This document shows positions 30,844 through 63,960 of a stretch of 64,000 bases of DNA, piece by piece. The first letter of the stretch is position 1. Each line of letters opens with the position of its first letter. Position numbers and translations under genes: made by a program. The DNA comes from Octopus sinensis. Its lineage: Eukaryota. The stretch covers positions 28,396,001 to 28,460,000 of the forward strand of contig NC_043010.1 in the NCBI RefSeq assembly GCF_006345805.1. The letters run 5' to 3'. Under the pieces are notes generated by a model, which ran no database searches, had not been told where the DNA came from, and saw nothing but the letters and a program-made list of their open reading frames with translations.

Positions 30844-30889
30844 GACACCTGATGAAGGCTGGAGGGTGTATCATCCGAAACGTTGTGTT
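30844..30889 (+). ncRNA. Minimal type I hammerhead ribozyme, right arm (one stem II mismatch)
   Basis: gacac-CTGATGA-A-ggctg...catcc-GAAA-CGTT-gtgtt. Confidence 0.65.
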
Positions 30890-34149: not shown

Positions 34150-34555
34150 TCTCTATATATATAAAGCTGAAGTTGTCTGTGTGTGTGTGTGTGTGTGGCA
34201 GGTTTGGTAATCTTCAACTAACACTATCTCCTCCGAGACGCTGCGGCGCAAGTTGACCAAAATTGAGAGTATGATAGAAGAAGGCTTGCTCTTCATTTTG
34301 TAGAAGAAAAAATTTAAATTTGACCATGTAAAGACCAAAAATTATTTACATCAAAAAGGTGCTTTTTTCTATGAAAATCCCTATTTTTTACGATCTTTTG
34401 ACTGCTGTGTTGCCATTTTTCAGTGTATTTCAACCAGAAAAATGTTCACTTAAAGAGAATAAGCTACATAATGCAAAATTTTTACTTTTCAAAAATTCCA
34501 ATTCTAAAGGATCGAAAAGAAAACAAACCCGAGCAATGCCAGGTGATACTGCTAG
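34150..34555 (+). mobile_element. Non-autonomous Helitron; second copy at about 48218-48613
   Basis: 5' TC, 3' CTAG, inserted between A and T, subterminal hairpin acccgagcaatgccaggt. The two copies are closely similar. Confidence 0.8.
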
Positions 34556-34581
34556 TTAATGAAATAGATAACATTACTCAC

Positions 34582-35195
34582 CCATCCATTGACTGGTATA
34601 CAGCTGTATGTATGGTCTGAGCATGACTGACGGTTCGTAAAGTAGCAAGGTGATGAAAAGGTTGGTATGGGCATCAGGTGAGCAGGTAACGGTTGTAGAG
34701 ATTGCTGGTGTTGATGATGCTGGTGCTGGTGTTGATGTTGATGTTGGTGTTGGTGCTGGTGTTGGCGTTGATGCTGGTGGTGCTGGTGATGCTGAGATTG
34801 GTGGTGTTGGTGTTGATGTTGGTGATGGTGCTGAGACTGATGTTGATGTTGGTGGTGGTGCTGGTGTTGGTGCTGGTGTTGATGTGGTGGCTGGGGGGAC
34901 ACAGCTGATGCCATTGTGGGTGTGTGGTAGTGGTGTTGGTGTCGGTGATGTCCAGAGTTTGTTGGCAACGGACTGTAACCAGACAGCATGCACGACGGCA
35001 TGTTGTGCGAGGAAGATTGCCCCACGGAAGGCGACGTGGTCATCCGTGAGGCCGAAGCAGCTGCTGCTGATGCAGACGAGGAAATGACCGTAGAAAACAC
35101 CGGCCAAGCTGATGAACTGGTTGTCGATGTTGTAAGAGAGGTAGGTACAGTTGAAGGTTGCTGGCACAGCATTGCATAAGATCTTAAAAGGGGTT
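34582..35195 (-). CDS. RNF111: Arkadia-like exon D (Ser-rich, long His/Gln repeat)
   Basis: In frame with ORF 34552-35172. Acceptor ttttgtttcag|AA, donor TGG|gtgagt, 614 nt, phase 1 to 0. Confidence 0.8.
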
Positions 35196-38350: not shown

Positions 38351-39187
38351 CTGCAATGCAAGAGGAATAATAAAGTTCAGAGACATTATAAAAAGAAAAG
38401 AGGCCAGGAGAAAGGATAGAGATAGAAAAGAGATAGAGAGATCGATTAAAAGAGAAAGTGGGAGATGCTTACTGGTGACAGTTAACTCTTTATTGAACTG
38501 CCATTGAATTATCTCCCTTTAATACGTCTGCCTCACCCTTTTTTTTTTTGAAACAGGAAAGCTGTGTGGGTGTTTGTGATGCTCCTTGTTTTAACGTTCA
38601 CTTCTCCATAATTACATGGACCAGACGAAATTTGGCTGAAGTAGATTTTTTACAGGAGGGTTACCCTTCCTGTTCACAGCCCTTAACTATTTCCAAGCAA
38701 GGTAATATTTCACCCTGGCCTGACATCTTTTCACCGAGTTTGGAAATGAAGGACACCACTTGTATGCTGGTTGGCAATGCTCATTTACAGCTATTAAGCA
38801 AATGTCAACACAAGGAAGCACAAACGCATGTGTGCCCCATCAACACCATCAATACTATATCTGCCAGCCAACAAATTACCTTGTAAGTAAAATTGGTAAA
38901 TGGAAACTAAAAAAAGCATGCTGTGAGTTTTACACAATAGGGTTCTTTTGGTTTCTGTTTACCAAATCCACTACAAGGATTTGGTCAGCACAGGACTACA
39001 GTAGAAAACACTTGCTTAAAGTGTCACACAATGGGACCAAACCCAAAACCATGTGGCCGAGAAGTAAACTTCTAAACCATATATGAAATATCAAAACACA
39101 AAAACTTCCACCTGGAAGAATTTATCATATATATATGCTTTCACTGTGAATGGTTTTGTTAAGCAGAGTTGAGTTTTGCAATTCTGT

Positions 39188-39370
39188 AAATAATAATAGT
39201 ATTTTATAAGCTTAAAGCTTATAGTGATCATCATGCAATGACTAAGGAAAATAGTCGACAGAAAAAAGGTTGTCCTGTGCATATCACATATGCCCCATTC
39301 TAAGACTATTTTCCTTAGTCATTGCATGATGATTGCTATAGGCTTTAAGCTTATAAAATACTATTATTTA
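39188..39370. repeat. Fold-back element: about 65-bp inverted arms (3 mismatches), 47-bp spacer
   Basis: 39192-39256 is the reverse complement of 39304-39368. Confidence 0.85.
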
Positions 39371-39397
39371 TTTATATATATATATATACATACATAA

Positions 39398-41203
39398 AAC
39401 TAATTAGAGAGAGAGTTAGTTTAGATGAGATGCAGTTTGGGTTCGTGCCAGGGAAAAGCACCACTGATGCCATATTCCTGGTAAGACAGCTGCAGGAGAA
39501 ATACCTAGCCAAAGATAAGCCCCTGTACCTGGCTTTCGTTGACATGGAGAAAGCCTTCGACAGGGTCCCCCAATCCCTTATCTGGTGGTCAATGAGGAAA
39601 CTAGGGATAGATGAATGGTTAGTGAGAGGTGTGCAAGCCATGTACAGGGACGCTGCTAATAAGGTGAGGGTTGGCAACAAGTACAGTGAAGAATTCCGGG
39701 TAGAGGTAGGGGTCCAGCAAGGTTCAGTCCTCAGCCCCCTCCTATTTATCATAGTCCTCCAGGCAATAACGAAGGAATTCAAGACAGGATGCCCCTGGGA
39801 GCTCCTCTACGCTGATGACCTTGCTCTAATTGCTGAGTCACTATCAGAACTGGAGGAGAAGTTTCAGGTGTGGAAGCAAGGATTAGAATCGAAGGGCCTT
39901 AGAGTCAACCTAGCTAAAACCAAAGTCCTAATAAGTAGGAAGGTAGACAAGTCACAAACGCCTTCAGGTAGATGACCCTGCTTGGTCTGTAGAAAAGGCG
40001 TAGGTAGGAACTCTATAAGATGTACCAAGTGTAAGCTATGGACACATATAAGGTGCAGCAACGTCAAAAGAAGGCTAACTAGGAAGATAGTTTTTGTATA
40101 TGGCAGATGTTCAGGAACAATAAACACTGAAAATGCACAGAGACCAACTTCCGCCACATTCCAGGGAGAAAAACTAGAAATAGTTGATAGCTTCCGTTAT
40201 CTAGGTGAACAAGTCAGTGTGTTGAAAGTGTAACTGTTAGAGTAAGAATAGCCTGGGCAAAGTTCAGAGAGCTCTTACCTCTGCTAAGGACAAAAGGCCT
40301 CTCACTCAGAGTAAAAGGCAGACTGTAGGACGCATGTGTACAAACAGCCATGCTACATGGCAGTGAAACATGGGCCGTGACTGCTGAGGATATGCGTAAG
40401 CTCGCAAGAAATGAAGCCAGTATGCTCCAATGGATGTGTAATGTCAGTACTCATACTCGACAGAGTGTAAGTACCTTAAGAGGTAAGTTTCACCTAAGAA
40501 GCATCAGTTGTGGTGTGCAAGAGAGACGTTTGCGCTGGTATGGTCATGTGGCGAGAATGGATGAAGATAGTTGTGTGAAAAAGTGCCACACCCTAGCAGT
40601 TGAGGGAACCTGTGGAAGAGGTAGACCCAGGAAAACCTGGGACGAGGTGGTGAAGCACGACCTTTGAACTTTAGGTCTCACCGAGGAATTGACTAGAGAC
40701 CAAGACCTTTGGAAGTATGCTGTGCGTGAGAAGACCTGGCAGGACAAGTGAGACCATAACCCATGGCCTCTACCTGGGATGTAGCTAGTCCACCTATGCA
40801 TACCTTTCCTTCTTGGGACACAAAACTCTACTTGTGAAGACCTGTTGAGGCAAGTGAAAATCAAAATCAATCAACAAATGGAAATTGTAGCTGTGATACC
40901 AGTGCCGGTGGCACATAAGAGAACCATCCGAACGTGGCCATTGCCAGCGCCGCCCCGACTGGCCTCCATGCTGGTGGCACGTAAAAATCACCATCCAATC
41001 GTGGCCGTTTGCCAGCCTTGTCTGGCACGTAAAAAGCACCCACTACACTCATGGAGTGGTTGGCGTTAGGAAGGGTATCCAGCCGTAAAAACATTGCCAG
41101 ATCAGACTGGGCCTGGTGCAGCCTTCTGGCTTCCCAGACCCCAGTTGAACCGTCCAACCCATGCCAGCATGGAAAGCGGACGCTAAACGATGATGATGAT
41201 GAT
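39398..41203 (+). mobile_element. 5'-truncated RTE LINE, copy 1 (RT core, PHD-like finger, 3' UTR, (GAT)n tail), with stops
   Basis: ORF 39430-39975 has FVDMEKAFDRVP, QGSVLSP and YADD; ORF 40350-40667 has RWYGHV and RGRPRKTW. Confidence 0.93.
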
Positions 41204-43049
41204 AAAACAACAGACGGATAATGTGCCGATGTGTCAATTCACTACAGCTGTTTCCAACAGATACAATCTCGAAGGTGCACATGCTGTTGGCTTTTGAATG
41301 TTGCGATTCCCGTATTCACCAGATGAAAATGGTTTCTTCTTTTTTTTTGTAATGATGTCTCCATTACTCAATTAAAAATTTGTTGGAAACAGTTGACACA
41401 TTAACCATCTGCTGTTATCTATTTATTTATTGTTCCCCTCATTTGGAACCTGCTCCTTGCCTAGATCCGAAGTATATTATGGACCGTACATTTATTGCAA
41501 CGTGTGTTTCTTGATTAGCCTCAGGGCTATTGATATGCTCGGTCAAGTACAGTTAATCGCATACAAAACCTGAATATCGTTCTGCCTGCACTTTGGTACC
41601 CACTTATTTATTCCTCTAATTTCGTTGTGTACACATTTTACTTTCCGACCCAACCAAGTACCTTACCATTTCAGTACCTGATTCACTTGAATCCTGATCT
41701 ATTTATATATCAATAGCTTCCATATCCTTATTTTTAAATTCAATTGAATTTATAGAGAACATTGATTTTCATGTTTTGTAATGCTGTGTTACTTCCCTTG
41801 GAGATTTCCTTTAACCTGGTTGTTACCGTATTTCAATTAATCAAGAAAAAAAAAAATGAAATACACAATTTAGTAAAATAAGTGCCACTATTAAGCCGTT
41901 TATAGGGTGGTGAGAAAGCAGACTCATTACTTCAGCAAACAAAAATGTTTAGTGGCATTTCTTCCAGATCCCCCAAGGCTGACTGTCTTCTATCATTTTG
42001 GGATGGATAAAGTACCTGTTAAATACTTTCTCCTTCCATCAAAATTGTGCCAAAAATAGAATTAAGCTTAGTGTTTGGAACATAAATTAACATGAAATTT
42101 TAATTTAGATCAGTTTAAAATAGGAAATCTATACCACAGAACCAAGGGCAGTCTCAGGCAGGTTGGCATCATAAAGGTTAACAACTTTGAAGAATTATTA
42201 AGCCTCGAGATTATCTCCCTTCCTCATAGAGCTGACCTTAATTGCCATTTGGTAATTATGACACATCCTTTGGAAGCAGGGATAATTTCAATAATCACAA
42301 CTTTATTTTGTGTGGTCTTTGATACTTGTCTATTTATAAAAAAAAAAAAAGGTAACATAATACAGAGCAACTTTAACCCTTAATAATATTTAATTATAAA
42401 AACATACTAGGAATTTGTAAACATCAAATGGCTAAGAGGGTCCACCTAAGTACAATAGGAATCAAAGAGGGTTCCATAGGTATAAAATGGTTGAGAACCA
42501 TTGCCTCCACATGAATTGTTGAAATGGACTAAAAGTTGTCCGTTTGGTTACACTCGGTAATATTCCCCTCACCTTTACACACTCTGCTGGCTGTATTGAA
42601 AAAACACTTGTCTTACTGTCCACTTGACCGTAATATCCAAAGGAATAAATAAACAAGAGCACAAACCTCCACCAAGGCAACACCAATGTCCTCTCAACGA
42701 TTAGCTGGAGATGGTTTTTAAAATGAGAAGATCTAAAAAAACTTGAGTGCTCTCACAAATTAGAATACTAAAAATGAGCCCAATGGCTCTCAAAAGTTAA
42801 GTAAAAAAACGGGAAAAATAATCCAGAATCCTAGTCCGGTACTGGATTGATCCCAAAATCTAATCAGTTTGTGCCAGTCATGAGGCCAAACATCTCTGAA
42901 AGTTTCATCAAAAATCTATCCAGCAGTTCTTGAGATATCTTGTCCAAACACAACTGAAAACAATACCTTCACCTTTGCTAAGGTGGAGGTAATAAATGAA
43001 GAGCGGAGGGAAGAGAGAAAAACAAAACGACACTGGCCGGCATACATAC

Positions 43050-44859
43050 CTGCTGTTGAGTGTTTCTACTTTGACAACTTCAATATCACTGTCGTCAGAA
43101 TCGGAAGATAGTTGCACGTCGGGTATAACAGGAAATGGTTCCTGCCAGTCACCGTGTGTGCTTGACAGAGATGACAGTCTCGAAGATGACGATGAGGATG
43201 AAGATGATGACGATGAAGATGAGGATGATGTAGAAGGGGAAGAAGAAGAGGATGATAAAGGCGACTGCGACTGACCGTCACCATTTTGCGTGCTGCCACT
43301 GGTCTCATCTCCTGTGGAGTTGTCAGTGTTAGAACTAACGCTGCTTTCTCCGGTTGTGTTGTTAATGTTTGTGGCCACAGTCAAGAGTTTCGAGAGTAAA
43401 CTTCCAGAGGTCTGACTCAGACTGCTGCCACAGCTACTAGAGTTACTCAACTCAGATTGAGGGTCATTCCTCTGGTCACAGTCAATCGGTTCTGTCGTAT
43501 TGTCGGTCCTGCTGTGTTGGATACAAGAACTGCGGGTTGCATCACTCCGGGGTGTTATGCACAGTTCGCAGTCGACGTAGGAGCTACTGCAGTTATCAGT
43601 ACTGCTGCCGGCAGCAAATTGACCACTGCTAGTATTTAGAGAGGTTGGGATGGTGTTGTGGCCAGTGCAACTATGGCCCGTCTCTTGGTTAGCGTTACGT
43701 GTTCCAACACGACATGGCTTGGGTGAGCAGACAGATGTCAACTGGTTTTCTACACTTGCTAAACATTCACTGCTATTGTTGTTGTTGTTGTTGCTGCTGC
43801 TGTTGTATCTTCTCGTTGGAGGAGGATGTGTGATCAACTGTTCATTAGAAGTTTCACCTGTGTTTCCACCACAACAAGAAAGGAGATTTATACCGTCATT
43901 ACCACCACTATTACTACCACCAACGCTACTACTACTACTACTACTGCTGCTGCTGCTACTGTTGCTGCTGTGCGCAGAAGGACTGTGGCTGGTGGAATGA
44001 CTGCGAGAAGCCGTTCGGCTGGCACTTGAGTTTAAATCAACATGAGAACCAGTTGGTAAATTTAGTACATCGATATCAGAAGCCGAGCTGCTACTGCTGC
44101 TGCTGTTGCTGTTTCTACGCTCACGTGGTCTTAGATCTGAACCTGTACACAGTGAATTGGCGCCGTGCATATGCTGGCGCTTGAAACAATGGTTATGGTG
44201 CAATGATGTGAAGTCCTTGTCCTCGCCTGCCGACTTGGAGACGACCGAAGAAGACTGGTGATGGTGGTGGTGTCGATGTGGGTGATGATGGTGATGATGA
44301 TGGTGATGACGGCGGTGATGATGGTGATTGCTGGATGCACTGTTGCTGCTGCCACTTGCACCAGCATTCGACCATGTGTTAGGGTAAGGAGAGTCTGCAC
44401 GGAGCAGAGTGCAGCGGTAACGTGACCTACTAGAGCTGGGACGAGGTAGATTAAAGAGGGTATAAGGATTTAACGAGTCCATTATATTATTAGAGTGTCC
44501 AGAAGAAGTAGCCCCTCGTCTACCACTTCCATTTGAACTGCTGCTTGCACGCGATCGGGATATTCCGGTCACATGGTCTGAGGTTTCGGTAGGCTCATCC
44601 ATACTAGAATTATATTCCAAAGCAGAACTAATGCTGGTTTGTGACCAGCTGCAAGGAGATTCTTTCTGCTCTTCAGATGCCAGCGACGAGTTATTACAAT
44701 AGGGGTCATCTTGAGCTAAGTTTGATAAGTGGTCCATATAGTGGCGAAAATTTTTGGCCAGGTCACCGAGCAATCTTAGTTGACCCTCATTGCTATTACT
44801 GTTAATGTTGCGAAATTGGGAAAAGTAACCAAAGTGATCGGAATCCAAAAGAACAGACT
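43050..44859 (-). CDS. RNF111: Arkadia-like exon B (1810 nt; Ser/His/Asn low-complexity; SIM-like SDIDVLNL and SDSDDSDIEVVKVE)
   Basis: Lies inside ORF 42908-44902. Acceptor ttttgtttccag|AG, donor AG|gtatgt. Length 2+602x3+2. Confidence 0.9.
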
Positions 44860-45649
44860 CTGGAAACAAAAAACGGAAAGCATTAGTAAAAGAGGTGCAC
44901 ATGGATTAGGCAAACACACACACACAACCCTCCCCCACAAAAAAAATACACAAATATTGTGTTTAGAATAATTAGCTTAAAAGATTTTATTCCCAATGCA
45001 AATGGCTATAATGAACTTATCTAATATCCTTCTGGCATAGTATCTATCTACATATGTTTGTTTGGTGTTGTCCGTTGGGAAAAAACAGCATTCAAAACCA
45101 TAGTAGAAATTAATGATATATTTTATTTTGGTCGAGTCAGGATCTTCGGTCACAACTTGTCTGAAAACCCTGTGCACACACAGGTGAAACTCAGAGAACA
45201 AGAGACTGACTTGATCAAAATAAAATCCAATAATATATATTCTTCATTCGTTTTATATCCATTTTCCCATGCTAGCATGGTTTGCACATCAAGGAATCGT
45301 TTTAGTCAGATGCCTTTCCTGTCACTAACCCTTCTTTTTCAAGTAAGGGAGCTCTTACATCACATATTTTTTAAAGGTATGAAGCTAGCAGGTAATTTAT
45401 TGGTGTAAGAAATGACAATAATGTCACTTGTAGCTCACAACGTTCACAGAGCTCAAATGTAAACAAACACTAACACACACAATGGACTTCTTTCAGTTTC
45501 CATTGACCAAATTCACTCCCAAAGGTTTTGGAAGGCCTGGGACTATAGTAGAAGACTCAACTGATGTGCAGTGACAGTGAACTCAAGACATGAAGTTGGG
45601 AAGCAAACTTCCAAACCACACAGCCATACCTGTGCTTTATAGCTAGCTG

Positions 45650-46030: not shown

Positions 46031-46439
46031 ATCCATGTACCAACTTATCTATTTCATGAGTGTGTATGAATATATATCCATGTGTGTGTCACTCTTTCTA
46101 TCCCATGTCTTCACACAAAAATGTTTGAGTGAAAACAGTGACAGTCCCTTCTTCAAGTCTCCATCTACAAAATCCATTTACCCAAGGTGCCATGCAGTGG
46201 AGCTGAATCCAAAAGTATGTAGTCGGAAGTAATGGTTGTGTATATGCATACATATTTATAGATGTATACACACAATCATATTTACTTGAACATAATGGAA
46301 TCTTAGAAATAATAGGACCTCCAATTTTTGGCATCTAAGATCGGTAAGATTTGTTAACCTTTCATCTGATTTTACACTAGAGTATATTGTTACTCTCCTT
46401 CATTTTGACACTATCGCTTTGTATTAAATTCCTCTTACT

Positions 46440-46939
46440 ATAAACACACACACACGTGTATTTGTATATACTTATGCATATATATGCACATACATGTATA
46501 CCTATTTACACATACATATCCAAATATATAGATATATATATATATACATATACACACACACATATATATACATATACACACACACACATATATATACATA
46601 TAGACACACACACATATATATACATATACACACACACACACACATACATACATATACACACACACACACACATATATATACATACACACACACACACATA
46701 TATATACACACACACACACACACATATATATACACACATACATACATATATATACATATACACACATACATATATATATATATATACATATACACACATA
46801 CATAATATATATATACTATACACACATACATATATATATTATATACATATACACACATACATATATATATATACATATACACACATACATATATATATAT
46901 AACATATACACACATACATATATATATATATATACATAT

Positions 46940-46970
<31 letters not shown>

Positions 46971-47026
46971 CCACATACATAATATATATACATATACACA
47001 CATACAATATATATATATATACATAT

Positions 47027-47057
<31 letters not shown>

Positions 47058-47408
47058 CATATACACATACATATATATATATACATACACACATATATAT
47101 ATATACATACATATACACACATATATATATATATACATACATATACACACATATATATATATATATACATATACACACATATATATATATATACATATAC
47201 ACACACACATATATATATACATATACACACACACATATATATACATATATATATACATATACACACACATATATATATATATATACATATACACACACAC
47301 ACATATATATATACATATGCACATATATATATATACATATACACACACATATATATATACACACACACATATATATATACATATACACACACACATATAT
47401 ATACATAT

Positions 47409-47441
<33 letters not shown>

Positions 47442-47650
47442 CATATACACACATATATATACATATACACACACACATAGACACATATATATACATACAC
47501 ACAGACACACATATATATACATACACACACATATATATACATACACACACACACATATATACATACACACACACACACACACACAGATACACACATACAC
47601 ACACACACACAGATACACACAGACATATATATATACACACACATACATAT
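46440..47650. repeat. 1.2-kb compound (TA)n/(CA)n microsatellite array in the exon A-B intron
   Basis: Direct inspection; source of the long Y/I/V/C/H/T ORFs. Confidence 0.97.
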
Positions 47651-47766
47651 TCATGTATAAATAAATATACAGTAAATCACAGTCAGATGTTCTTAGGACA
47701 AAGCTCCAAAGAGTAAACGAAAGTGGAGTGTTCAGGAGAGTATGGGCTGAGTTGAGTGTAGCTTAC

Positions 47767-48819: not shown

Positions 48820-50245
48820 ACACACTACAAACACACAGACTCATACCTAAACTTCTCTTCCTCCCATCCCAAACACACCAAGCTTTCCATCCCCTGTTCC
48901 CAATTCCTCCGTCTACGTAGGCTCTGTAGTGACGACCATGACTTTGAGACTCAATCTCAACTCATGGCTCGCCACTTCATCCTACATGGATACCCACTCA
49001 CCACTATCCACACCGCCCTTGCTAGAGCACGTTCCGTAGACCGTGCATCTGCTCTCTCCCCCCCAAAACCGCCCTGCAGTCTCCCGCCTCCCTTTTCCCT
49101 TCACTTACCACCCCACCACTCCAACACACCATTCTTCGAGCTTTCCGGCATCTCCAGTCCAACCCGTCCACTTCACACCTCTTCCCTAACCGACTCCCCT
49201 CCTTCCAACGAGCCCATAACCTACAAGACCTCTTGGTCCACAGCTTCTTCCCCAACCCTACCTCCCAACCTGACTCGTTCCCCTGCTTCCGCCCACGCTG
49301 CCGCAAGTGCCCTTACCTCTCCAACACCACCCTCCTCACCGGCACCCATCATCGACCCTATCACATCATCGATTCCTTCACCTGCACCTCCAGCAATATC
49401 ATCTATTGCATCTCCTGCTCTCTCTGCCATTCCCTGTACATTGGACAAATGGGACGCCGCTTGGCTGACCAGTTCGCGGAACACCTCCAAGACATCCGCC
49501 TCGCCAATGACACTCCAGTCTCACGCCATTTCCGCTCCACTGGTCACTCCTTGCAACACCTCTCTCTTTTTACTCTTTTACTCTTTTACTTGTTTCAGTC
49601 ATTTGACTGCGGCCATGCTGGAGCACCGCCTTTAGTCGAGCAAATCGACCCCGGGACTTATTCTTTGTAAGCCCAGTACTTATTCTATCGGTCTCTTTTG
49701 CCGCCGCTAAGTGACGGGGACGTAACACACCAGCATCGGTTGTCAAGCGATTTGGGGGGGACAAACACAGACACACAAACACATATACATATATACGACG
49801 GGCTTCTTTCAGTTCCGTCTACCAAATCCACTCACAAGGCATTGGTCGGCCCGGGGCTGTAGCAGAAGACACTTGCCCAAGATGCCACGCAGTGAGACTG
49901 AACCCAGAACCATGTGGTTGGTTAGCAAGCTACTTACCACACAGCCACTCCTGTCTGTTTTCGGATTGTCCTTGCACAGAGGCCATCCGGATTCCCGCAT
50001 GCGCCGTGAACAGGGATTAATCTTCTCTCTTCGCTCTTTTACGCCATTTGGGCTCAACTCTCCCCCCTTTTCATCTAACCTCCTCCCCGACTCCTACTTC
50101 TCTTCACTTCTACATCTTTTCACCCTTACTCGCTTCCCCTTCCCTCTTCCCCTCTACTCTCTTTCCCTCTTCTCCCCTACTCTCTTTCCCTCTGCTCCCT
50201 CACTCCCCTCCTCTCCTCTCTCTTCTCCTCCTCCTCCCCACTCTT
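48820..50245 (+). mobile_element. Penelope-like element 3' fragment (RT thumb plus GIY-YIG endonuclease), frameshifted and split by a SINE
   Basis: YLNFSSSHPKHTKLSIPCSQFLRLRRLCS, then CRKCPY..FTCTSSNIIYCISCSLCHSLYIGQ..R.LADQFAEH..PVSRHF..GHSLQHL. It resumes after the SINE as SVFGL..RREQGLIFSLRSFTPFGLN. Confidence 0.9.
49561..49952 (-). mobile_element. Young family A SINE inserted into the GIY-YIG coding region
   Basis: Complete head-to-tail copy with CpGs retained. The Penelope reading frame rejoins across it (cctctct / cctgtct duplication). Confidence 0.85.
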
Positions 50246-50345
50246 NNNNNNNNNNNNNNNNNNNNNNNNNNNNNNNNNNNNNNNNNNNNNNNNNNNNNNN
50301 NNNNNNNNNNNNNNNNNNNNNNNNNNNNNNNNNNNNNNNNNNNNN
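50246..50345. other. Assembly gap (100 N)
   Basis: Direct inspection. Confidence 1.
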
Positions 50346-50541
50346 AAATGAATTATTGATGAGTGTATGATATAGATGCAGGCATGGCCACGTGTGTGTG
50401 TGTGTGCTTAAGCAGTTCGTTTTGCAACTGCATGTTTTCCAGTTCAGTCCACTGCATGGCACCTTGGGCAAGTGTGTCTTCTATTATAACCTCGGGCCAA
50501 CCAAACCCTTGTGAGTGGTAGATGGAAACTGAAAGAAGCTC

Positions 50542-50609
<68 letters not shown>

Positions 50610-50731
50610 ATATATATATATGTATATAAAGGTGAATGTAAACAAACAAACAAACAAAGTTGGCTTTAGAAGTGTTGAGATGTCCTAGAAAGTTAAAGAA
50701 GTGATTTTAAATTCTGAAACGCAGGATAATG

Positions 50732-50950
50732 CTAATAATATAGCCTGAACATAAGCTACCCCTATTTGGCAGAAAAATGTGTTGGCAGCCAGCTATGAGA
50801 CTCGAACTCATACCTCCATGATTACGCGTCATGGTACTCTGAACCATTAAGCTAAACCGCCCACACCTCACGGAGTTCGAGTCTCATAGCTGGCCGCCAA
50901 CACTTTCTACAAAATAGGGGTAACTTATCTTGTTCAGGTTATATTATTAG
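50732..50950. mobile_element. Fold-back element with about 78-bp inverted arms around a tRNA-like core
   Basis: 50732-50809 is the reverse complement of 50873-50950 with a few mismatches and indels. Confidence 0.8.
50787..50861 (-). pseudogene. tRNA-like cloverleaf (Thr-CGT-like pseudogene or SINE head)
   Basis: GGCGGTT-TA-GCTT-AATGGTTCA-GAGT-A-CCATGA-CGCGTAA-TCATGG-AGGT-ATGAG-TTCGAGT-CTCAT-AGCTGGC-T. A and B boxes intact; U33 absent; G2:G71 mismatch. Confidence 0.65.
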
Positions 50951-50964
50951 TGTGTGTATGTGTG

Positions 50965-51012
<48 letters not shown>

Positions 51013-51618
51013 TGTGTGTGTATGTTTGTGTGTTTGTGTTTGTCCCCCCACCCAAACAACCAATATTGGTGTATTTACGTCCCCATAACTTAGCAGTTAG
51101 GCAAGAGACCAATAGAATAAGTACTAGGGTCAATTTGTTTGACTAAAGGCGGTGCTCCAGCATGACCGCAGTCAAATGACTGAAGTTAAAAAATATAATA
51201 CTAAAAGATATATGACAGGCTATATGCATGTGTGTGTGTGTGTATACATGTGCATGTATATGTACTCCACCGCTTGGTAATGTGATGGTTTGTTTATGTC
51301 CTCATGACTCTGGTTTGGTAAAAGAAACCAACAGAATATAAACCAGACTTAAAACAGTGCTGGAATCGATTTCTTTGACTAACACTATAATGCAGTGCTC
51401 CCGTATGGTAGTAGTCCAGTGTAGGTGTACTTACATCCTGTAACTTAGCGGTTCAGAAAAAGAGAGACTGATAGAATAAGTACCAGGATTTTAAAAAAAA
51501 GGCGGGGTGTCAAGTCATTTGACCAAAATTCTTCAAAGCAGTGCCCAAGCATGGTCACAGTTGAATGACTGAAACAAATAATAGATATATAACCACACAC
51601 ATACATCTACATACATAC

Positions 51619-52036
51619 ACATTATTTACATTTGACGGATATTTGTCCTCACAACATTTCGGCTGATATACCCTCCAGCCTTCATCAGGTGTCTTGGGGA
51701 AATTTTGAACTTGGGTTCTCATTCTTACGGTATTTTTCAATGTTATTATCATTATTATTCAGGTCACTGCCTGGAATTGAACTCAGAATCTTGGAGTTAG
51801 TAGGCCACACTCTTAACCCCAAGATTCGAAGTTTGATTCAGTGACCTGAATAATAATAAGAAGAAGAAGAAGAATAACAACAACATTGAAAAATACCTTA
51901 GGAATGAGAACCCAGGCTCAAAATTTCCCCAAGACACCTGATGAAGGCTGGAGGGTGTTAACTGTGTTAACAACAAACAAGATGAGGACAAATATCCATC
52001 AAATGTAAATATGTTTTCATCTCTTAAATATAGAAC
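51619..52036. mobile_element. Palindromic tRNA/hammerhead composite element, copy 2 (left-arm hammerhead 51650-51693 degenerate, right-arm hammerhead deleted)
   Basis: Same centre (gttagtaggccacactcttaacccc), arms and right end as 30574-30965. Confidence 0.85.
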
Positions 52037-53311
52037 TGTATTACATACATACACATTGTATGGAAGGTCATAAAGAAATAACGTGAAGTGTTAATTTATC
52101 AATGCAGCCACTCTTCTCAACTTTGGCACGAATGCAGAACTATATAACCACCAAGATTTACACATCAAATCATAGAACAATCTATCTTGTGTTAGGTGCA
52201 GAAATTAAATCACAGGAAATATGATTTTTGCATGTTTGAACTGAAAATTTCATATAAATGTTATCAGACGTAATTATGAAAATACAGACAAGCCTTCAGG
52301 GAGACTGCACTGGTTGACTTTGATGTATCAAGCTTACAAAACAACACAGAGAGATCTTAGGAAGCTGCTTGTTAGGCTTGTTATGAAGTAAAGAGAATGC
52401 AGTTTTTCTGTTAATCGTGTGTGTGTGTGTGTGTGTATATATATATGTCCGTTTTCCATGCTAGCATGGGTTGGACAGTTCGACCGGGGTCTGGGAAGCC
52501 AGGAGGCTGCACCAGGCTCCAGTCTGATCTAGCAGAGTTTCTACAGCTGGATGCCCTTCCTAACGCCAACCACTCTGTGAGTGTAGTGGGTGCTTTTTAC
52601 ATGCCACTGGCACAGGGGCCAGAGCACAGCCATGATCGGTTGGTGCTTTTACGTGTCACCGACATGGACGCCAGTCAGGTGGCGCTGGCATCGGCCACGT
52701 TCGGACGGTGCTTTTTACGTGTCACCAGCATGGGTATCTTAACTACAATTTCCATTTGATTTTTATTTTGATGTTAGTGTTGACGTACTTGACTCAATAG
52801 GTCTTCTCAAGAACAGCGGGTCACTCTACGACCCAAGGTTAGCACAGCAGGCCATCGGGCCTTCAGTCACAGCATATCTCAGTCTTTGTCATTTCCTCTG
52901 TGAGGCCCTACATGCCATATATATATATATATATGTATATATAATCATAGAAACAGGTATGGCTGTGTGGTTAAGAAGCTGCCATCTCAACAATCTGGTC
53001 TGGGGTTCAGTTCCACTGTCCAGCTCCTTGGGCATGTGTCCCGTATGTTGTAATATAGCTCTGGGTTGATCGAAGCCTTATGAGTGGATTTGGTAGAGGC
53101 TGAGACTGAAAGAAGGCAGCTGTGTGTGAGTGTGTGTGCTTGTGTATAGATGTATGAATACGTGTGTGTATATATATGTAAATATATACGTATGTGCACA
53201 TGTATACACATACGTGTACATATATAAGTATTACATCTGACAGAGTAATATGAATGCTAAATGGTTAAAACCATCGTGTGATGACAAAAAAAGGGGACAT
53301 ATATCTATCTA

Positions 53312-53346
<35 letters not shown>

Positions 53347-53456
53347 ACATATATACACATAAATACATATGTACACATATATAAACACATATATACACAT
53401 AAATACATATATACACATAAATACATATATACACACATATATACATATAAACACAT

Positions 53457-56296
53457 TATCATCATCATCATCGTTTAGCGTCCATTTTCCATGCTAGCAT
53501 GGGTTGGACGGTTCTACTGGGGTCTGTGAAGCCAGAAGGCTTCATCAGGCCCAGTCAAATCTGGCAGTGTTTCTACGGCTGGATGCCCTTCCTAACGCCA
53601 ACCACTCCGTGAGTGTAGTGGGTGCTTTTTACGTGCCACCCGCACTGGTGCCAGACAGAGCTGGCAAACGGCCACGAACGGATGGTGCTTTTTATGTGCC
53701 ACCGGCATGAGGGCCAGGCGAGGCTGGCAACGGACACGAAACGGGGCGGTGCTGGCAACGGTCGCGAAACGGAAAGTTCTCTTACATGCCACCGGCACTG
53801 GTAACACATCTGCAATTTCCATTGATCGATTTCGATTCTGATCGTCACTTGCCTCAACGGGTCTTCACAAGCAGAGTTTTGACATGCCACCGGCACTGGT
53901 AGCACATCCGCAATTTCCATTGATCGATTTCGATTCTGATCCTCACTTGCCTCATCACGTCTTCACAAGTAGAGTTTTGTGTCCCAAGAAGGGAAGGTAT
54001 GCATACGTAGGCTGGCTCCATCCCATGTAGAAGGCCACGGGTTATGGACTCACTTGTCCTGCCGGGTCTTCTCGCGCACAGCACACTTCCAGAGGTCTCG
54101 GTCTCTAGTCATTTCCTCAGTGAGACCTAAAGTTCGAAGGTCGTGCTTCACCACCTCGTCCCAGGTTTTCCTGGGTCTGCCTCTTCCACAGGTTCCCTCA
54201 ACCGCTAGGGTGTGGCACTTTTTCACACAACTATCTTCATCCATTCTCGCCACATGACCATACCAGCGCAAACGTCTCTCTTGCACACCACAACTGATGC
54301 TTCTTAGGTCCAGCTTTTTTCTCAAGGTACTTACACTCTGCCGAGTGTGAGTACCGGCATTACACATCCATCGGAGCATACTGGCTTCATTTCTAGCGAG
54401 CTTACGCATATCCTCAGCAGTCACGGCCCATGTTTCACTGCCATGTAGCATGGCTGTTCGTACACACGCATCATACAGTCTGCCTTTCACTCTGTGCGAG
54501 AGGCCTTTTGTCACCAGCAGAGGTAAGAGCTCTCTGAACTTTGCCCAAGCTATTCTTACTCTAGCAGTTACACTTTCAGCACACCCGCCCCCGCTGCTGA
54601 CTTGGTCACCTAGGTAATGGAAACTATCAACTATTTCTAGTTTTTCTCCCTGGAAAGTGACGGAAGTTGGTCTCAGAGCATTTTCAGTGTTTATTGTTCC
54701 TGAGCATCTGCCACATACAAAAACCATCTTCCTAGTTAGCCTTCCTTTGACATTGCTGCATCTCTTATGTGTCCATAGCTTACACTTGGTGCATCTTATA
54801 GAGTTTCTACCTACACCTTTTCTACAGATCGAGCAGGGCCATCTACCTGAAGGTGTTTGTGATTTGTCTACCTTCCTACTGATTACGACTTTGGTTTTAG
54901 CTAGATTGACTCTGAGGCCCTTCGATTCTAATCCTTGTTTCCACACCTGGAACTTCTCCAGTTCTGATAGCGACTCAGCAATTAGAGCAAGGTCATCAGC
55001 ATAGAGGAGCTCCCAAGGGCATCCTGTCTTGAATTCCTCCGTTATTGCCTGGAGGACTATGATAAATAGGAGGGGGCTGAGTACTGAGCCTTGGTGGACT
55101 CCTACCTCTACCCGGAATTCTTCACTGTACACATTTCCAACCCTCACCCTACTAGCGGCGTCCCTGTACATGGCCCGCACAGCTCTCACTAACCATTCAT
55201 CTATCCCTAGTTTCCTCATTGCCCACCAGATAAGGGATCGGGGGACCCTGTCGAAGGCTTTCTCCATGTCAACAAAAGCCAGGTACAGGGGCTTATCTTT
55301 GGCTAGGTATTTCTCCTGCAGCTGCCTTACCAGGATATAGCATCAGTAGTACTTTTCCCTGGCACAAACCCAAACTGCATCTCATCTAAACTAACTCTCT
55401 CTCTAATTAGTTGGGCTATGACCCTCTCCGTAACCTTCATCACCTGGTCCAACAGCTTGATACCTCTGTAGTTATTTGTATCTAGGGCATCACCTTTACC
55501 TTTGTAGCAGTTGACTATTATACTGCTACACCAGTCATTGGGTATGACCCTTTGTGTATCACCTGATTAACTATACGGTGACTAGGCTATAGCTGACACT
55601 ACCAGACATTTTGAGCATCTCTGCAGTGATTCCTGATGGGCCTGGGGCTTTCCCTGTCTTCATGCTTCTAATTGCCTTAGCTACCACGGAACTATCAACT
55701 CGGATAGCTGGTCCCTCTGTTGGGTCAACATTCGGCAGACTCTCTTTATCCCATTCATTTTCTTCATTCAGCAACCTTTCATAGTGGCATCTCCAAACCT
55801 CTCTCTTTGCATCCTCATTTAGCGCAAGTGAACCATCTTCCATGCGAACACACTTCTCTCCTACCACATCACGATTCTCTCTCACACACTGTCTTGCAAC
55901 ACGAAACACCTCCAGTCTTTGGTCCTCACGGCGCAGAACATTGGCAAATTTTTTCTTATCTGCTTCCCCTCTGGCTAAATAAACCTGTCTCCTAGCTTCT
56001 CTTTTGGCAGTCTGATACAATCCCCTGCTACCCCCATTTTTCCAGACCTTCCAAGCCTGTCTCTTTTCTCTAATAGCCCTGTCTACAATATTGTTCCACC
56101 ACCACGTTATTCTAGGTCGAGAGGGGACTTTGCACCAGCCACAGATCTGGTCAGTGGCTCTCAGCAGGTTGTCCCTTAGAAACGTCCAGCTGTCTTCTAC
56201 CCCCTGTGATGCTCTATCCCCTTCTACTTCGTCAGAGGCTTCAAGTAATATGTCCCTAAATCTCTGTCCATTTGCAGGATCTTTAAGCTTCCAGAT
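53457..56296 (-). mobile_element. 5'-truncated RTE LINE, copy 2 (pre-RT region, RT, PHD-like finger, 3' UTR with an about 98-bp tandem duplication)
   Basis: ORFs 55571-56392 ([12 protein letters not shown]) and 54050-55267 (KAFDRVP, QGSVLSP, YADD); (GAT)n tail; no APE domain present. Confidence 0.95.
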
Positions 56297-56299
56297 GCA

Positions 56300-56505
56300 T
56301 ATAAACACATATATACATATAAACACGTATATACATATAAACATATATATACATATAAACATATATATATACATATAAACATATATATACATATAAATAT
56401 ATATATACAGATATAAATATATATATACAGATATAAATATATATATACACAGATATAAATATATATATACATATAAATATATATATACAGATATAAATAT
56501 ATATT
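56300..56505. repeat. AT-rich minisatellite (acatataaac/atatatat units)
   Basis: Direct inspection. Confidence 0.85.
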
Positions 56506-60994: not shown

Positions 60995-63960
60995 ATATAG
61001 TTAAGTTAGTGATGTTAATTTTTTGGCTCAAAAAGCGAAAAGCAAGGCCATGTAGGGGGACATGGAGTTATGTACAGAGCGGGTGTTCATGCAAAGAGCT
61101 CAGGCCATTTCTGGTCAAGAGAGACTTTGAACCGAGCAGTCGTCGGCATATTCACTATCTCATCCGGCAGCTTATTCCACGGACCGCAACCCGGACAGAG
61201 AAAGCCCCTCTCCTTCAATTGAGATGAAATCGTCGCAGATAGAGCTTTTCGGAGTGACCCCGCAGCCGACGCTCTGGAGCAGGAGTGAAGAACAGCTCTT
61301 TCGAGAGGTTACACTTTCCGCTTATGATATTGTGAGCGAGAATGAGATCACCACGGCTTCGTCGTTTTCTAGAGAATAAAGGTCGAGCGTCTTCAGCCTT
61401 TCTTCATAAGACAAATGCTTGAGGCCAAGAACCATGCGGGTAGCTAGCTTCTGGACTCTTTCGAGATGATGTATGTCTTTGAGGAGATAAGGAGAAGAGG
61501 CTTGAATCCCGTACCCCAATATGGGTCTCACCAGCGTGACATAGAGCGGTAAGAATATGGCTGCTGTGAGCATTCCAAATGACCGTCGAATCAAAAACAG
61601 AACTCCGCGTGCTTTGTTGGCAGCATGGACGCACTGGGCTGAAGGCGAAAAGGAAGAATCCACCAAGATACCCAGGTCCTTTACCTGGTCGGTTCTCTCC
61701 AGCAGCAGATGACCCGGCTCAAAATCAAGTTGAGTTGCAGGAGAGGAGCCAACAGGCAGATGACAGCACTTTGACACGTTCAGACACATGTCCCATTCAT
61801 TAGACCATCTCCAAACTTGGTGGAGGCATCGACGAAGATCATCTATATCACTGCGAGGAGCAACCAGTTTGACATCATCGGCAAATAGAAGGGTGTGTTG
61901 CGTGAGGTCGTCGGGCAAGTCATTTATGAAGACTAAAAACATTAAGGGCCCAAGCACTGAACCTTGAGGCACGCCACTGCTCGCACTGGAGACGTCGGAC
62001 AGCGAACCATTAACTTGGACTTGGAAGGAGCGATCTGAGAGGAAGGCACCAACCCATTGTACAATAATCCGGATGGAAACTATATGCTTGAAGCTTGACA
62101 AGTAATAGGCGGTGGTTAACCGAGTCAAAAGCTTTGGAAAAGTCCAATAAAACGATCTCAACAGCATCACCATCATCCAGGATACGCGTCACCAATTCTT
62201 CCATTACCAGTAAGTTGGTCAAGCATGATCTCTTCGGCATGAAGTCGTGAAGGGAATCAGAGATAGAGGCTGTGTTTTGGAGGTGGAGCAACATACTTTT
62301 CTTAAGGATGGTTTCGAACATCTTGCTGATTATTGAAGTAAGGGAAACCGGCCGGTAGTTAAGCAGGTCTTCGCGGCTCCCTTTCTTGAAAATCGGGCAG
62401 ATTATCACTGTTCTCCAGTCCGCAGGTATAACACCCGTCGCAAATGACATATTGAATAGAAGTGTTAAAGGTTCACAGATGACCAGAGCCAACGCTTTGA
62501 TAACCTGTGGGTGTATGCCATCAGGGCCATGACCCTTGTTGACATTGAAGCCTTGAATAACGCGTTCGACTTCGTCCCGAGTGATGACCAATCTAGGCAT
62601 TGGAGGTACCGATTTATCAAATGGAAGGGGTTCACGACCATCATCTTGTTTGAAAATTAAATAACTGACTCTGCTGATAAGGGTCCTCAATCGATACGCC
62701 TGTTGAGTTTACCAACGTTGCAATTTGGTTGTTCAAGTGGGAATTCCATTGGACATGGGCAAAGAAGGTTTTTGGATTACGACTGGCATTTGCTGCAATT
62801 CTGTATTCATATCTGAAGCGTACTTCCTTTTCAATTTTCACGGCTCGGTCTCGTTGAGTTTTGTACACCTCAAAAGCTGCAGTCGAATCTAGATTTTTGA
62901 ATTCAGCCCAAGCAATATCTCTGAGTCGAAGTTCTTGTTTAACCTTCTTCGTCACCCAGGGCTTGTGTTTCTTCTTCTTGGGAAGCCCAACGGGAACTGC
63001 TTGGTCAGTCAACCAGATTACATATGCTTTGAGGGACGACCATAGTTCGTCAACTGAGGACATCGTCATCAGGGATCGCCAGTCCAGACTCGGTAAGAAT
63101 TTCAAGATTGATTGCAGAGAAGACTCTACATGACAGCGAAGTAGTTGTAGGTGTAGAAAAAGTTGTGTGCATGTCGAACTTCAGGACTGCGTGATCACTC
63201 TTGGCAAGAGGGGCGCACACAGATAAGCCTGACACTGATCTTGGATAGCGGGAGAATACCAGATCCAGCACAGATGACTGCTGCCCAGACCGATGCCTTG
63301 TCGGAGATTCAACATGTTGCAATAGAAAACAATCTTCAGCCACGTCAAGAAGGGGCTGGCCAAACCGGGAGGATGATGTACAAATTGATGCAGGCCAGTC
63401 GATCGTGGGAGCATTGAAGTCTCCTAATATCAAACATTCATGAGAAGCTGAAACGAATCTTATCACTTCAAGTAAATGAGAATCGTCCTGGGGGTCACCA
63501 AGAGGTGGCCTGTAGACAGCTAACACAGGCAGGCAAAACCCGGATAGGCTCAGCTTGCAATAGACGGCATCAAAGTTTGTTGTAGGTTGAGCATTAGCGG
63601 GTAGAATACCACTGGACGGTTTGAGATCAGATTTAACATACACAGCAACACCTCCACCTCGCCTTTTTTCTGTCACATCTGAAGAGGGCGTAGCCCTGAA
63701 GGTGGTTTTCCGAGTCCTTTACTGCTGGAGTCAGCCAAGTCTCGGTGATAGCTATCACATCTGGGGAATCACGCATGGCCAGTGTAAAAAATTCGCTGAA
63801 CTTTGGAAATAAGGAGCATGAGTTGGTATAGACGATGCTGAGCTGTGAAGTTTGAGGGGCGGGAATTAGGGAACAAGCAGAATAAGGGGTATCAGAGATA
63901 GCATCGTTGTCGGGGGTATCTACTTTACTTCGATTCGCCCTCAATTCACTTTCCCTGTCA
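60995..63960 (-). mobile_element. CR1-clade LINE ORF2 (APE endonuclease plus RT), near full-length, several frameshifts; may continue beyond the window
   Basis: IAITETWL, RRGGGVAVYV, LILGDFNAP, SDH, GPDGIHP, NYRPVSLTS, LDFSKAFD, GVPQGSVLGP, LFADDVKL, ERVQKLATRMV across ORFs 63633-63944, 63050-63676, 62641-63105, 62010-62690 and 61322-62176; short AACT-type tail. Confidence 0.93.

What the first reader, a model, noticed from the sequence alone, without database searches (positions are those of the whole stretch)
50732..50950. Second, unrelated fold-back element built around a near-complete tRNA cloverleaf
Seen: 78-bp inverted arms enclose a 63-nt spacer. On the minus strand the spacer plus one arm folds into a 75-nt cloverleaf with perfect T-arm (ATGAG/CTCAT, TTCGA), 6-bp anticodon stem, loop CGCGTAA (CGT = Thr, U33 missing) and intact A and B boxes. 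The other arm is an inverted copy of the T-arm, acceptor 3' strand and downstream tail. Inference: as in the 30574 family, a tRNA-like gene is capped by an inverted duplicate of its own 3' portion. Two sequence-unrelated families sharing this design suggests a recurrent mechanism (snap-back priming during reverse transcription) or a class of tRNA-centred fold-back mobile elements.
Basis: partly seen in the sequence, partly recalled or inferred. Interest (0 to 1): 0.7.

Follow-up and report, generated by a model that had tools for sequence, protein, structure and literature searches.

The report
Fold-back built on a tRNA-like repeat
A decayed tRNA-Thr-like unit carries an upside-down copy of its own last 78 bases, forming a 219-bp hairpin-capable element inside an older repeat; it is real, but here it is single-copy, shows no sign of function, and fold-backs of this shape are common in this genome.

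Summary
Two 78-nt inverted arms (50732-50809 and 50873-50950; 93% identical, two 3-nt indels) enclose a 63-nt spacer. Spacer plus left arm form a tRNA-Thr(CGT)-like cloverleaf on the minus strand (Rfam 38.5 bits, threshold 29), the only tRNA match in the 64 kb.

- The element lies at one end of a ~325-bp foreign block interrupting the internal microsatellite of an older SINE-like repeat.
- No second copy exists in the window, and no searchable collection holds this genome, so mobility as a family is untested.
- A systematic scan finds six fold-backs of similar geometry in 64 kb, from five unrelated families. Only this one passes a tRNA model. The '30574 family' is multi-copy but has no tRNA hit, only a B-box-like motif.

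Best reading (0.45): a dispersed tRNA-derived copy gained an inverted duplicate of its own 3' part in one strand-switch event and is decaying neutrally. Main rival (0.35): a TA-bounded MITE-like element carrying a tRNA-derived core.

A copy census in the source genome and an empty orthologous site would decide. Interest is modest.

The parts
50787..50861 (-). tRNA-Thr(CGT)-like cloverleaf (75 nt), degenerate: 1 acceptor mismatch, 4 G.U pairs, G33, near-consensus A and B boxes
   Evidence: ARAGORN; Rfam RF00005 38.5 bits against gathering 29; pair-by-pair check
50732..50809 (-). Left arm = 3' part of the direct unit ('unit A'): T arm from its third base, acceptor 3' strand, trailer and ~45 nt more, ending ...TATATTATTAG
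   Evidence: Inverted-repeat search and arm alignment
50773..50777 (-). T5 run (Pol III terminator-like) 10 nt after the tRNA-like 3' end; unit A only, the other arm has T3 because of a 3-nt indel
   Evidence: Sequence and T-run scan
50862..50872 (-). 11-nt junction (CGTGAGGTGTG in sense) between the inverted arm and the tRNA-like 5' end; no significant similarity to the rest of the unit
   Evidence: best local score reached by 40% of shuffles
50873..50950 (+). Right arm = inverted partial copy ('unit B') of the T arm, acceptor 3' strand and tail, ending at the same ...TATATTATTAG as unit A
   Evidence: nhmmer arm profile hits only these two places
50627..50731 (.). 105 nt of non-palindromic, non-host sequence adjoining the left arm, with (AAAC)4 at 50640-50655; together with the fold-back it forms the ~325-bp foreign block
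   Evidence: Absent from five paralogous SINE copies (alignment A1); no other copy in the window
50380..50626 (+). 5' part of the host SINE-like repeat, ending in its internal (TA)n microsatellite
   Evidence: Flank blastn and alignment A1
50951..51200 (+). 3' part of the same host SINE-like repeat, starting in (TG)n(TA)n(TG)n; contiguous with the 5' part in other copies

Best explanation
A dispersed, degenerate copy of a tRNA-Thr-type Pol III unit lies on the minus strand. It consists of the tRNA-like 75 nt, a short trailer and further downstream sequence. It sits inside a ~325-bp block of foreign DNA that split the internal (TA)n/(TG)n microsatellite of an older SINE-like repeat.

In one event a polymerase left its template near the 5' end of this unit and copied 78 nt of the opposite strand, from the tail inward to the T arm, before resuming or being joined. 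That placed an inverted duplicate of the unit's 3' part 11 nt upstream of the tRNA-like 5' end.

The polymerase could have been a DNA polymerase during replication or break repair, which I favour (about 0.3 of the 0.45). It could also have been a reverse transcriptase during integration, in a twin-priming-like event (about 0.15).

The resulting fold-back has no demonstrated function and has since decayed neutrally.

Shown: the anatomy, the insertion into the host repeat, the relative age, and the lack of a second copy in 64 kb. Inferred: the one-step strand switch, which polymerase did it, and the absence of function.
For: 1. The host repeat's two halves are contiguous in five paralogs. The extra DNA runs from ~50627 to 50950, with the fold-back at one extreme end abutting the host (TG)n. 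That fits one inserted block whose end was rearranged better than a palindromic transposon that happened to land exactly at a pre-existing junction.
2. There is no other copy of the arms, the unit or the 105-nt segment in the window. Two independent insertions 11 nt apart are therefore implausible, and the arms must share a single origin.
3. The arms differ by 5 substitutions (4 of them transitions) and two 3-nt indels, and every difference breaks pairing. JC distance is 0.035 per arm against 0.155 for the host copy from its consensus. The duplication is younger than the host repeat and shows no maintenance of the hairpin.
4. The T5 in unit A lies where a tRNA-gene terminator would be, and the arms extend 45 nt past it. 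This argues against copying from a Pol III transcript and for DNA-level copying.
5. One-step creation of hairpins by template switching is documented (PMC8794818), and so are inverted, partly overlapping cDNAs at retro-insertions (PMC12016303).
6. Dispersed tRNA-derived loci are very numerous in cephalopod genomes (~17,000 in giant squid; PMC6962438). This applies only if my recollection that the host SINE is an octopus repeat is right; that was not tested.
Against: - The palindrome ends in C-TA...TA-G, and three other palindromic element families in the window end exactly in TA...TA. One of them is proven multi-copy, with the fold-back as a family trait. By analogy the target could be an ordinary TA-targeting MITE.
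- Documented template-switch patterns reached 59 bp in the study read, and twin-priming overlaps have a median of 12 bp and are very rare for SINEs (Alu 0.02%). A 78-nt inverted duplicate with a 63-nt spacer is at or beyond those ranges.
- No microhomology is visible at either junction.
- No ancestral, arm-less state could be examined.
- The direction of the indel that creates the T5 is unknown.
Confidence: 0.45

Rival explanations
1. A MITE-like non-autonomous DNA transposon. The 78-nt arms would be long terminal inverted repeats, the element would move as a 215-219-bp unit into TA sites by borrowing a Tc1/mariner-type transposase, and its core would derive from a tRNA gene or SINE head. This would be a SINE-to-MITE conversion, as the 30574 family may also be.
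For: - Size, AT-rich ends, lack of coding capacity and strong hairpin potential all fit.
- The ends read C-TA|ATAATATAG...CTATATTAT|TA-G.
- Three other palindromic element families in the same 64 kb end exactly in TA...TA with similar arm and spacer geometry. One of them has two copies that share the whole palindrome.
- A mariner-type transposase fragment is present in the window.
- Tc1-Mariner is the most active TIR group reported for Octopus vulgaris, and MITE families are annotated there (PMC13282606).
Against: - No second copy exists in the window.
- TA is self-complementary, so it cannot be told apart from the palindrome itself, and the palindrome runs one base beyond it.
- On the left, non-host DNA continues for 105 nt beyond the supposed TIR end, while the right end abuts the host microsatellite. 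A MITE would have had to land within 1-2 nt of a pre-existing junction, although dozens of TA sites lie in the adjacent (TA)n.
- The terminal 19-mer matches no other transposon end in the window.
Confidence: 0.35
2. A Pol III transcript of a tRNA-derived SINE is reverse-transcribed, and the cDNA snaps back on itself (or a second cDNA is primed from the tail on the other target strand). This would yield a head-to-head pair: one full-length unit and one unit truncated in the T arm.
For: - Geometry fits. The inverted piece is on the 5' side of the tRNA-like unit, both units end at the same ...TATATTATTAG, which looks like a short (ATT)n-type tail, and the inverted unit looks 5'-truncated.
- A snap-back with a 63-nt loop reproduces the observed order of parts.
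- LINE reverse transcriptases are present in the window.
- The 30574 core, with its 4-nt centre, is what a tight snap-back would give.
Against: - The T5 10 nt after the tRNA-like 3' end should stop Pol III before the rest of the arm.
- If the unit ends at ...TTATTAG, the 105 nt beyond it is unexplained. If the unit includes the 105 nt, the second cDNA was primed internally and overlaps the first by 78 nt, against a documented median of 12 bp, and twin priming is nearly absent for SINEs in the one data set read.
- There is no recognisable target-site duplication outside the microsatellite.
Confidence: 0.12
3. A functional locus: either a working tRNA or tRNA-like Pol III gene whose flanking hairpin regulates it, or a hairpin precursor of small RNAs.
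For: It is the best-preserved tRNA-like sequence in the window. It has near-consensus A and B boxes and a correctly placed T5, and the hairpin is very stable.
Against: - G33, an acceptor mismatch, four G.U pairs and a score only 9.5 bits above threshold.
- The cloverleaf is not the preferred fold.
- A transcript starting at the tRNA-like promoter and ending at the T5 would not include the upstream arm, so no RNA hairpin would form.
- All arm differences disrupt pairing.
- The element sits inside a decayed repeat.
Confidence: 0.05
4. An artefact or coincidence: an assembly-made palindrome next to the nearby 100-N gap, or two unrelated insertions that happen to be adjacent.
For: A gap of 100 N lies about 390 bp upstream (50246-50345). 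Palindromic chimeras are a known library artefact (general knowledge).
Against: The arms differ by 5 substitutions and two 3-nt indels, whereas an artefactual fold-back of one molecule would be near-identical. With no other copy of the family in 64 kb, two independent hits 11 nt apart are very unlikely.
Confidence: 0.03

Closest known systems
Miniature inverted-repeat transposable elements with long arms (near-palindromic MITEs such as human MADE1 derived from Hsmar1; named from general knowledge, not tested here)
   Same: Short, non-coding, AT-rich ends, long inverted arms able to form a hairpin, possible TA flanks. The element sits among other TA-bounded palindromic elements in the same window.
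   Different: No second copy could be found. The arms are not related to any transposon end in the window. The core is a complete tRNA-like unit with its own terminator-like run. Foreign DNA continues beyond one arm.
5' inversions of LINE-mediated insertions (twin priming; PMC12016303)
   Same: An inverted segment sits on the 5' side of a retro-type copy, and the two segments can share sequence.
   Different: The documented overlap is about 12 bp (quartiles 4-17), whereas here the whole inverted segment (78 nt) duplicates sequence kept in the direct unit. Twin priming is nearly absent in SINEs (Alu 0.02%). No poly-A or clear target-site duplication is present.
Template-switch mutations that create hairpins in one step (PMC8794818; also PMC5453318 and the de novo miRNA study, bioRxiv 10.1101/2023.04.19.537475, both listed but not read)
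   Same: An inverted copy of adjacent sequence in cis with a unique spacer between source and copy. The model makes no assumption about which side of an element is affected.
   Different: The arm length (78 nt) exceeds the largest pattern reported in the study read (59 bp), and the ancestral state is not available to prove a single event.
tRNA-derived SINEs of cephalopods and other molluscs (Ohshima & Okada 1994, cited in PMC10886601; PMC4758252; PMC6962438)
   Same: A tRNA-related head with A and B boxes, dispersed location inside other repeats, and simple-repeat-like ends.
   Different: A T5 lies right after the tRNA-like part. No family copies could be examined, and the inverted cap is not a SINE feature.
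The '30574' fold-back family in this same window (30567-30929 and 51623-52011)
   Same: A fold-back whose centre carries tRNA/SINE-head-like sequence (B-box-like GTTCGATTCC) followed by a trinucleotide AT-rich repeat, with TA at the element ends.
   Different: It is unrelated in sequence and is a complete palindrome with a 4-nt centre and ~190-nt arms. It has no covariance-model tRNA hit, and it is demonstrably multi-copy with the palindrome as a family trait.

Membership tests
Functional tRNA gene | Covariance-model score above the curated threshold | tested here: met
   RF00005 38.5 bits against gathering 29; ARAGORN Thr(cgt). This is low for a working nuclear tRNA (general knowledge).
Functional tRNA gene | Canonical 7-nt anticodon loop with U33 and a fully paired acceptor stem | tested here: not met
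   Loop CGCGTAA has G33 (or a 9-nt loop in the Rfam alignment). G-G mismatch at pair 2-73 (75-mer numbering; the 2-71 pair of a standard tRNA) and 4 G.U pairs.
Functional tRNA gene | Pol III terminator (T run) shortly downstream | tested here: met
   T5 at 50777-50773 on the minus strand, 10 nt after the 3' end; absent from the inverted copy.
tRNA-derived SINE | tRNA-related head with internal A and B boxes | tested here: met
   TAGCTTAATGG and AGTTCGAGTCT are near consensus.
tRNA-derived SINE | Many dispersed copies sharing head, body and tail | tested here: inconclusive
   No other copy in 64 kb.
tRNA-derived SINE | No Pol III terminator inside the transcribed unit; target-site duplications | tested here: inconclusive
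   T5 is present in unit A but is T3 in unit B, and the direction of change is unknown. The only flanking direct repeats are the microsatellite.
MITE | Terminal inverted repeats, small size, no coding capacity | tested here: met
   78-nt arms, 219 bp, only spurious short ORFs.
MITE | Target-site duplication of fixed length flanking the inverted repeats | tested here: inconclusive
   TA is present at both ends but is self-complementary and lies inside the palindrome (C-TA...TA-G).
MITE | Inserted segment coincides with the inverted-repeat ends | tested here: not met
   Compared with five paralogous host-repeat copies, the foreign DNA extends 105 nt beyond the left arm. A nested earlier insertion could still explain this.
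MITE | Multi-copy family with conserved ends | tested here: inconclusive
Twin-priming 5' inversion | Inverted segment on the 5' side, joined to the direct 3' segment with little or no shared sequence | tested here: not met
   The position fits, but the whole 78-nt inverted segment duplicates sequence retained in the direct unit. The published overlap has a median of 12 bp.
Template-switch hairpin mutation | Inverted copy of nearby sequence in cis, with the ancestral sequence lacking it | not testable with these tools
   The cis inverted copy is shown. No ortholog or paralog of the locus was available to show the ancestral state.

The most novel reading that the evidence does not exclude
The element is a member of a real, mobile family of fold-back elements whose core is a Pol III-type tRNA-like unit with its own terminator. 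A tRNA/SINE-derived sequence would have been converted by inverted duplication into a palindromic, transposase- or hairpin-mobilised element. The 30574 family would be a second, independent instance in the same genome, which would make this a recurrent SINE-to-fold-back route that disperses Pol III units.
Probability: 0.2. Interest if true: 0.6.

Novelty: new member of a known kind. Interest (0 to 1): 0.3.

Why it matters
If the element is a one-off, it is a clean natural example of how a single strand-switch can turn part of a tRNA-derived repeat into a 78-bp-stem hairpin. That is raw material for new inverted-repeat elements or small-RNA loci, but it is otherwise ordinary repeat decay.

If it proves to be a family, it would link two classes of mobile DNA that are usually kept apart (Pol III-driven SINEs and inverted-repeat DNA elements). 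It would also show a route by which tRNA-like Pol III units are spread as palindromes.

The density of fold-backs here, six in 64 kb, is worth a genome-wide look in its own right.

Tried and rejected
1. Reaching other genomic copies through the protein collections. I queried the 54-aa ORF over the element and a six-frame concatenation of the whole insertion with X at stops, and found no relatives. Ten window ORFs are absent from the collection by exact look-up, so these nulls say nothing about copy number.
2. Orthologous site through the nearby 664-aa ORF. There was only one distant homologue (47% identity), on an unrelated ENA contig, and the exact look-up failed.
3. DNA scans. The element 22-mer was not found in the metagenome contigs or the 19-mer in the viral contigs. 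Host-SINE positive controls gave nothing in the viral set, one chance hit in the metagenomes and 15 chance hits in GC-rich bacteria. The collections therefore hold no DNA of this organism.
4. Literature search for host-SINE sequence strings to pin down the organism found nothing. The octopus attribution rests on my memory of that repeat and is untested.
5. An apparent similarity between the 11-nt junction and the anticodon-stem/variable region was reached by 40% of shuffles and was dropped.
6. I considered P3469 (3469-3711) as proof of recurrent in-situ inverted duplication and rejected it as evidence. Its arms are only 73% identical, as diverged as unrelated family copies, so it may be two insertions.
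7. An encoded CCA after the acceptor stem, as a mark of retroposed mature tRNA, is present only in ARAGORN's shifted register. It is one base off in the register that matches tRNA-Thr, so I treat it as chance.
8. The assembly-artefact and two-independent-insertion readings were rejected on arm divergence and on the absence of other copies.

Full report
WHAT IS THERE

The window is eukaryotic. It has LINE reverse-transcriptase and endonuclease ORFs, mariner-type and piggyBac-type transposase fragments, dense microsatellites and a 100-N gap.

At 50732-50950 there is a 219-bp fold-back. Its arms are 50732-50809 and 50873-50950 (78 nt each) and its spacer is 50810-50872 (63 nt). The arms align with 70 matches, 5 mismatches and two 3-nt indels, which is 93% identity without gaps. 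As single-stranded DNA the element folds at -70.3 kcal/mol, against -20.2 +/- 3.3 for shuffles (z = -15.3).

On the minus strand, spacer plus left arm contain a tRNA-like 75-mer at 50861->50787.
- ARAGORN calls it tRNA-Thr(cgt).
- Rfam's tRNA model scores 38.5 bits against a gathering score of 29.
- In a permissive scan of all 64 kb it is the only tRNA match at E <= 1, although the window holds dozens of SINE copies.
- The cloverleaf has 22 pairs with one mismatch and four G.U, a perfect T arm, and a 6-bp anticodon stem with loop CGCGTAA (G33). The A and B boxes are near-consensus.
- The 75-mer does not prefer this fold thermodynamically.

It is a degenerate tRNA-derived sequence. From memory, its D loop, anticodon loop, G4.U69 pair and U73 discriminator resemble metazoan tRNA-Thr. 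That comparison was not tested.

HOW THE PARTS RELATE

Read in the sense of the tRNA, the structure has three parts in order:
1. An inverted copy of T arm + acceptor 3' strand + ~55 nt, at 50950->50873.
2. An 11-nt junction.
3. The tRNA-like unit followed by the same ~55 nt, at 50861->50732.

Put another way, a full unit A and a unit B truncated in the T arm lie head to head. Both end at the same ...TATATTATTAG.

A T5 run lies 10 nt after the tRNA-like 3' end in unit A, at 50777-50773. Unit B has T3 at that place because of one of the two indels. The junction has no significant similarity to the unit.

CONTEXT

The flanks belong to a dispersed SINE-like repeat with an internal (TA)n(TG)n tract, which has a dozen or so copies in the window. 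In five paralogs the left and right flanks are contiguous, so the host copy carries an insertion (alignment A1).

The foreign DNA is larger than the fold-back. It runs from about 50627 to 50950. It includes 105 nt of non-palindromic sequence with (AAAC)4 next to the left arm, while the right arm abuts the host (TG)n directly.

The host copy is 0.155 (JC) from its family consensus and the arms are 0.035 each from their common ancestor. The arm duplication is therefore several-fold younger than the host repeat.

COPY NUMBER

Neither blastn nor nhmmer with filters off finds another copy of the arms, the unit or the 105-nt segment in the window.

Every route to other genomes failed for lack of coverage rather than through a meaningful negative:
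- Protein-collection tricks found nothing.
- Exact look-ups of eleven window ORFs failed.
- The one homologue of a neighbouring exon lies on an unrelated contig.
- Scans of viral, metagenome and prokaryote contigs missed even the very abundant host SINE, apart from chance matches.

Whether this is a family is therefore untested.

HOW UNUSUAL THE ARCHITECTURE IS

A systematic scan for non-microsatellite inverted repeats finds six self-palindromic elements in 64 kb:
- the target;
- the two copies of the '30574 family' (30567-30929 and 51623-52011);
- 27060-27284;
- 39187-39374;
- 3469-3711.

Arms are 70-190 nt and spacers 4-63 nt, and the six belong to five unrelated sequence families.

The 30574 family is a nested, nearly complete palindrome with a 4-nt centre. 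Its two copies share the whole structure and a terminal 24-mer found nowhere else, so there the fold-back is a family trait and was amplified as a unit. Its core carries a B-box-like GTTCGATTCC followed by (TAA)n, but no tRNA hit even at E <= 10.

Three of these families end exactly in TA...TA, and the target ends in C-TA...TA-G.

The 3469 element is a (GAT)n-tailed SINE-like copy with an inverted partial second copy just beyond its tail. Its arms are only 73% identical, so it may be two separate insertions.

Fold-backs are thus a common feature of this genome and are not specifically centred on tRNA.

MECHANISM

Three readings fit the anatomy.

(a) A one-off strand switch on a dispersed tRNA-derived copy.
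- It explains why the fold-back sits at one extreme end of a larger foreign block.
- It explains why the arms decay without any compensatory pattern.
- It explains why no relatives are seen nearby.
- If the T5 is ancestral, it also explains why the arms include 45 nt beyond a Pol III stop, which favours DNA-level copying in replication or repair over copying from a Pol III transcript.
- One-step hairpin creation by template switching is documented, although the largest pattern in the study read was 59 bp (PMC8794818).

It gives the right order of parts. However, published inverted and direct cDNA overlaps have a median of 12 bp, and the phenomenon is nearly absent for SINEs (PMC12016303).

(c) A TA-targeting MITE-like element. 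It is supported by the TA ends, by the company of other TA-bounded palindromes including a proven family, and by the presence of mariner-type elements (for octopus, PMC13282606). It requires the element to have landed within a base or two of a pre-existing junction, even though long (TA)n tracts lie next to it.

I put (a) and (b) together at 0.45, favouring the DNA-level version, and (c) at 0.35. A functional locus gets 0.05 and an artefact or coincidence 0.03.

The description is accurate, and the tRNA resemblance passes covariance-model scoring.

The claim of a 'second family with the same design' is weakened on both sides. The target has no demonstrated relatives, and the 30574 family has no demonstrated tRNA.

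The idea of a recurrent process that makes fold-backs in this genome is reasonable given six in 64 kb. The evidence does not tie that process to tRNA or to reverse transcription.

VERDICT

This is a real and well-described structure. Most likely it is an ordinary by-product of repeat turnover or a low-copy MITE-like element. Interest is modest unless a copy census shows a family. The census and an empty orthologous site are simple and decisive, but they need the source genome.

Noticed in passing
30567-30929 and 51623-52011: The '30574 family': two copies (79% identical) of a ~390-bp nested palindrome with a 4-nt centre. Its termini are TA|TTTACATTTGACGGATATTTGTCC, a 24-mer found only at these element ends. 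The core has a B-box-like GTTCGATTCC plus (TAA)n, with no Rfam tRNA hit at E <= 10. The fold-back is a family trait, so it was amplified as a unit. The left outer ~25 nt are missing or diverged in the 30567 copy.
   Followed up: partly
27060-27284 and 39187-39374: Two more palindromic elements bounded exactly by TA...TA. Arms are ~94 and ~70 nt, spacers ~37 and ~47 nt, and arm identity is 83% and 80%. Each is single-copy in the window, apart from a 71-nt fragment of the first at 30408-30477. They are candidate Tc1/mariner-type MITEs.
   Followed up: partly
3469-3711 (family copies also near 890, 13391, 18462, 19758, 20267, 24599, 41022, 52506, 53463, 57870): An abundant SINE-like repeat with a (GAT)n tail. 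At 3469-3711 a canonical minus-strand copy is followed, just 3' of its tail, by an inverted partial second copy. The arms are only 73% identical, so this is either an old inverted duplication or two adjacent insertions.
   Followed up: partly
50380-50626 + 50951-51200, and a dozen or so other places (e.g. 23320-23950, 1320-1725, 2625-3015, 6400-6690, 49570-49915): The host SINE-like repeat, with an internal (TA)n(TG)n microsatellite and a (GTAAAAGA)n-like end. From memory it matches a very abundant octopus repeat, but no tool or paper search could confirm the organism.
   Followed up: partly
46438-47654 (also 5750-6070, 53120-53450): Long compound TG/TA microsatellites. They generate spurious ORFs of up to 380 aa rich in Cys, Tyr, Val and Ile, and many sub-threshold mir-297/mir-466-type Rfam matches.
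   Followed up: no
54050-55267(-), 55571-56392(-), 61322-63676(-), 39430-39975(+), 15195-15608(+), 32615-33043(-): Transposable-element coding remnants: reverse transcriptase with a weak, sub-threshold PHD-finger match, an endonuclease plus RT of a second LINE, an RT fragment closely related to the first, a mariner-type DDE fragment and a piggyBac-type DDE fragment.
   Followed up: partly
42908-44902(-), 26112-26708(-), 34552-35172(-): Long ORFs rich in Ser, His, Pro and Gln runs with no Pfam domain. They are possibly exons of a real low-complexity protein gene. The 664-aa ORF has a single distant homologue (47% identity over 34% of its length) on ENA contig ERZ21867824 ctg99394l.
   Followed up: partly
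50246-50345: An assembly gap of 100 N about 390 bp upstream of the fold-back. The divergence between the arms argues that the palindrome is not an assembly artefact.
   Followed up: yes
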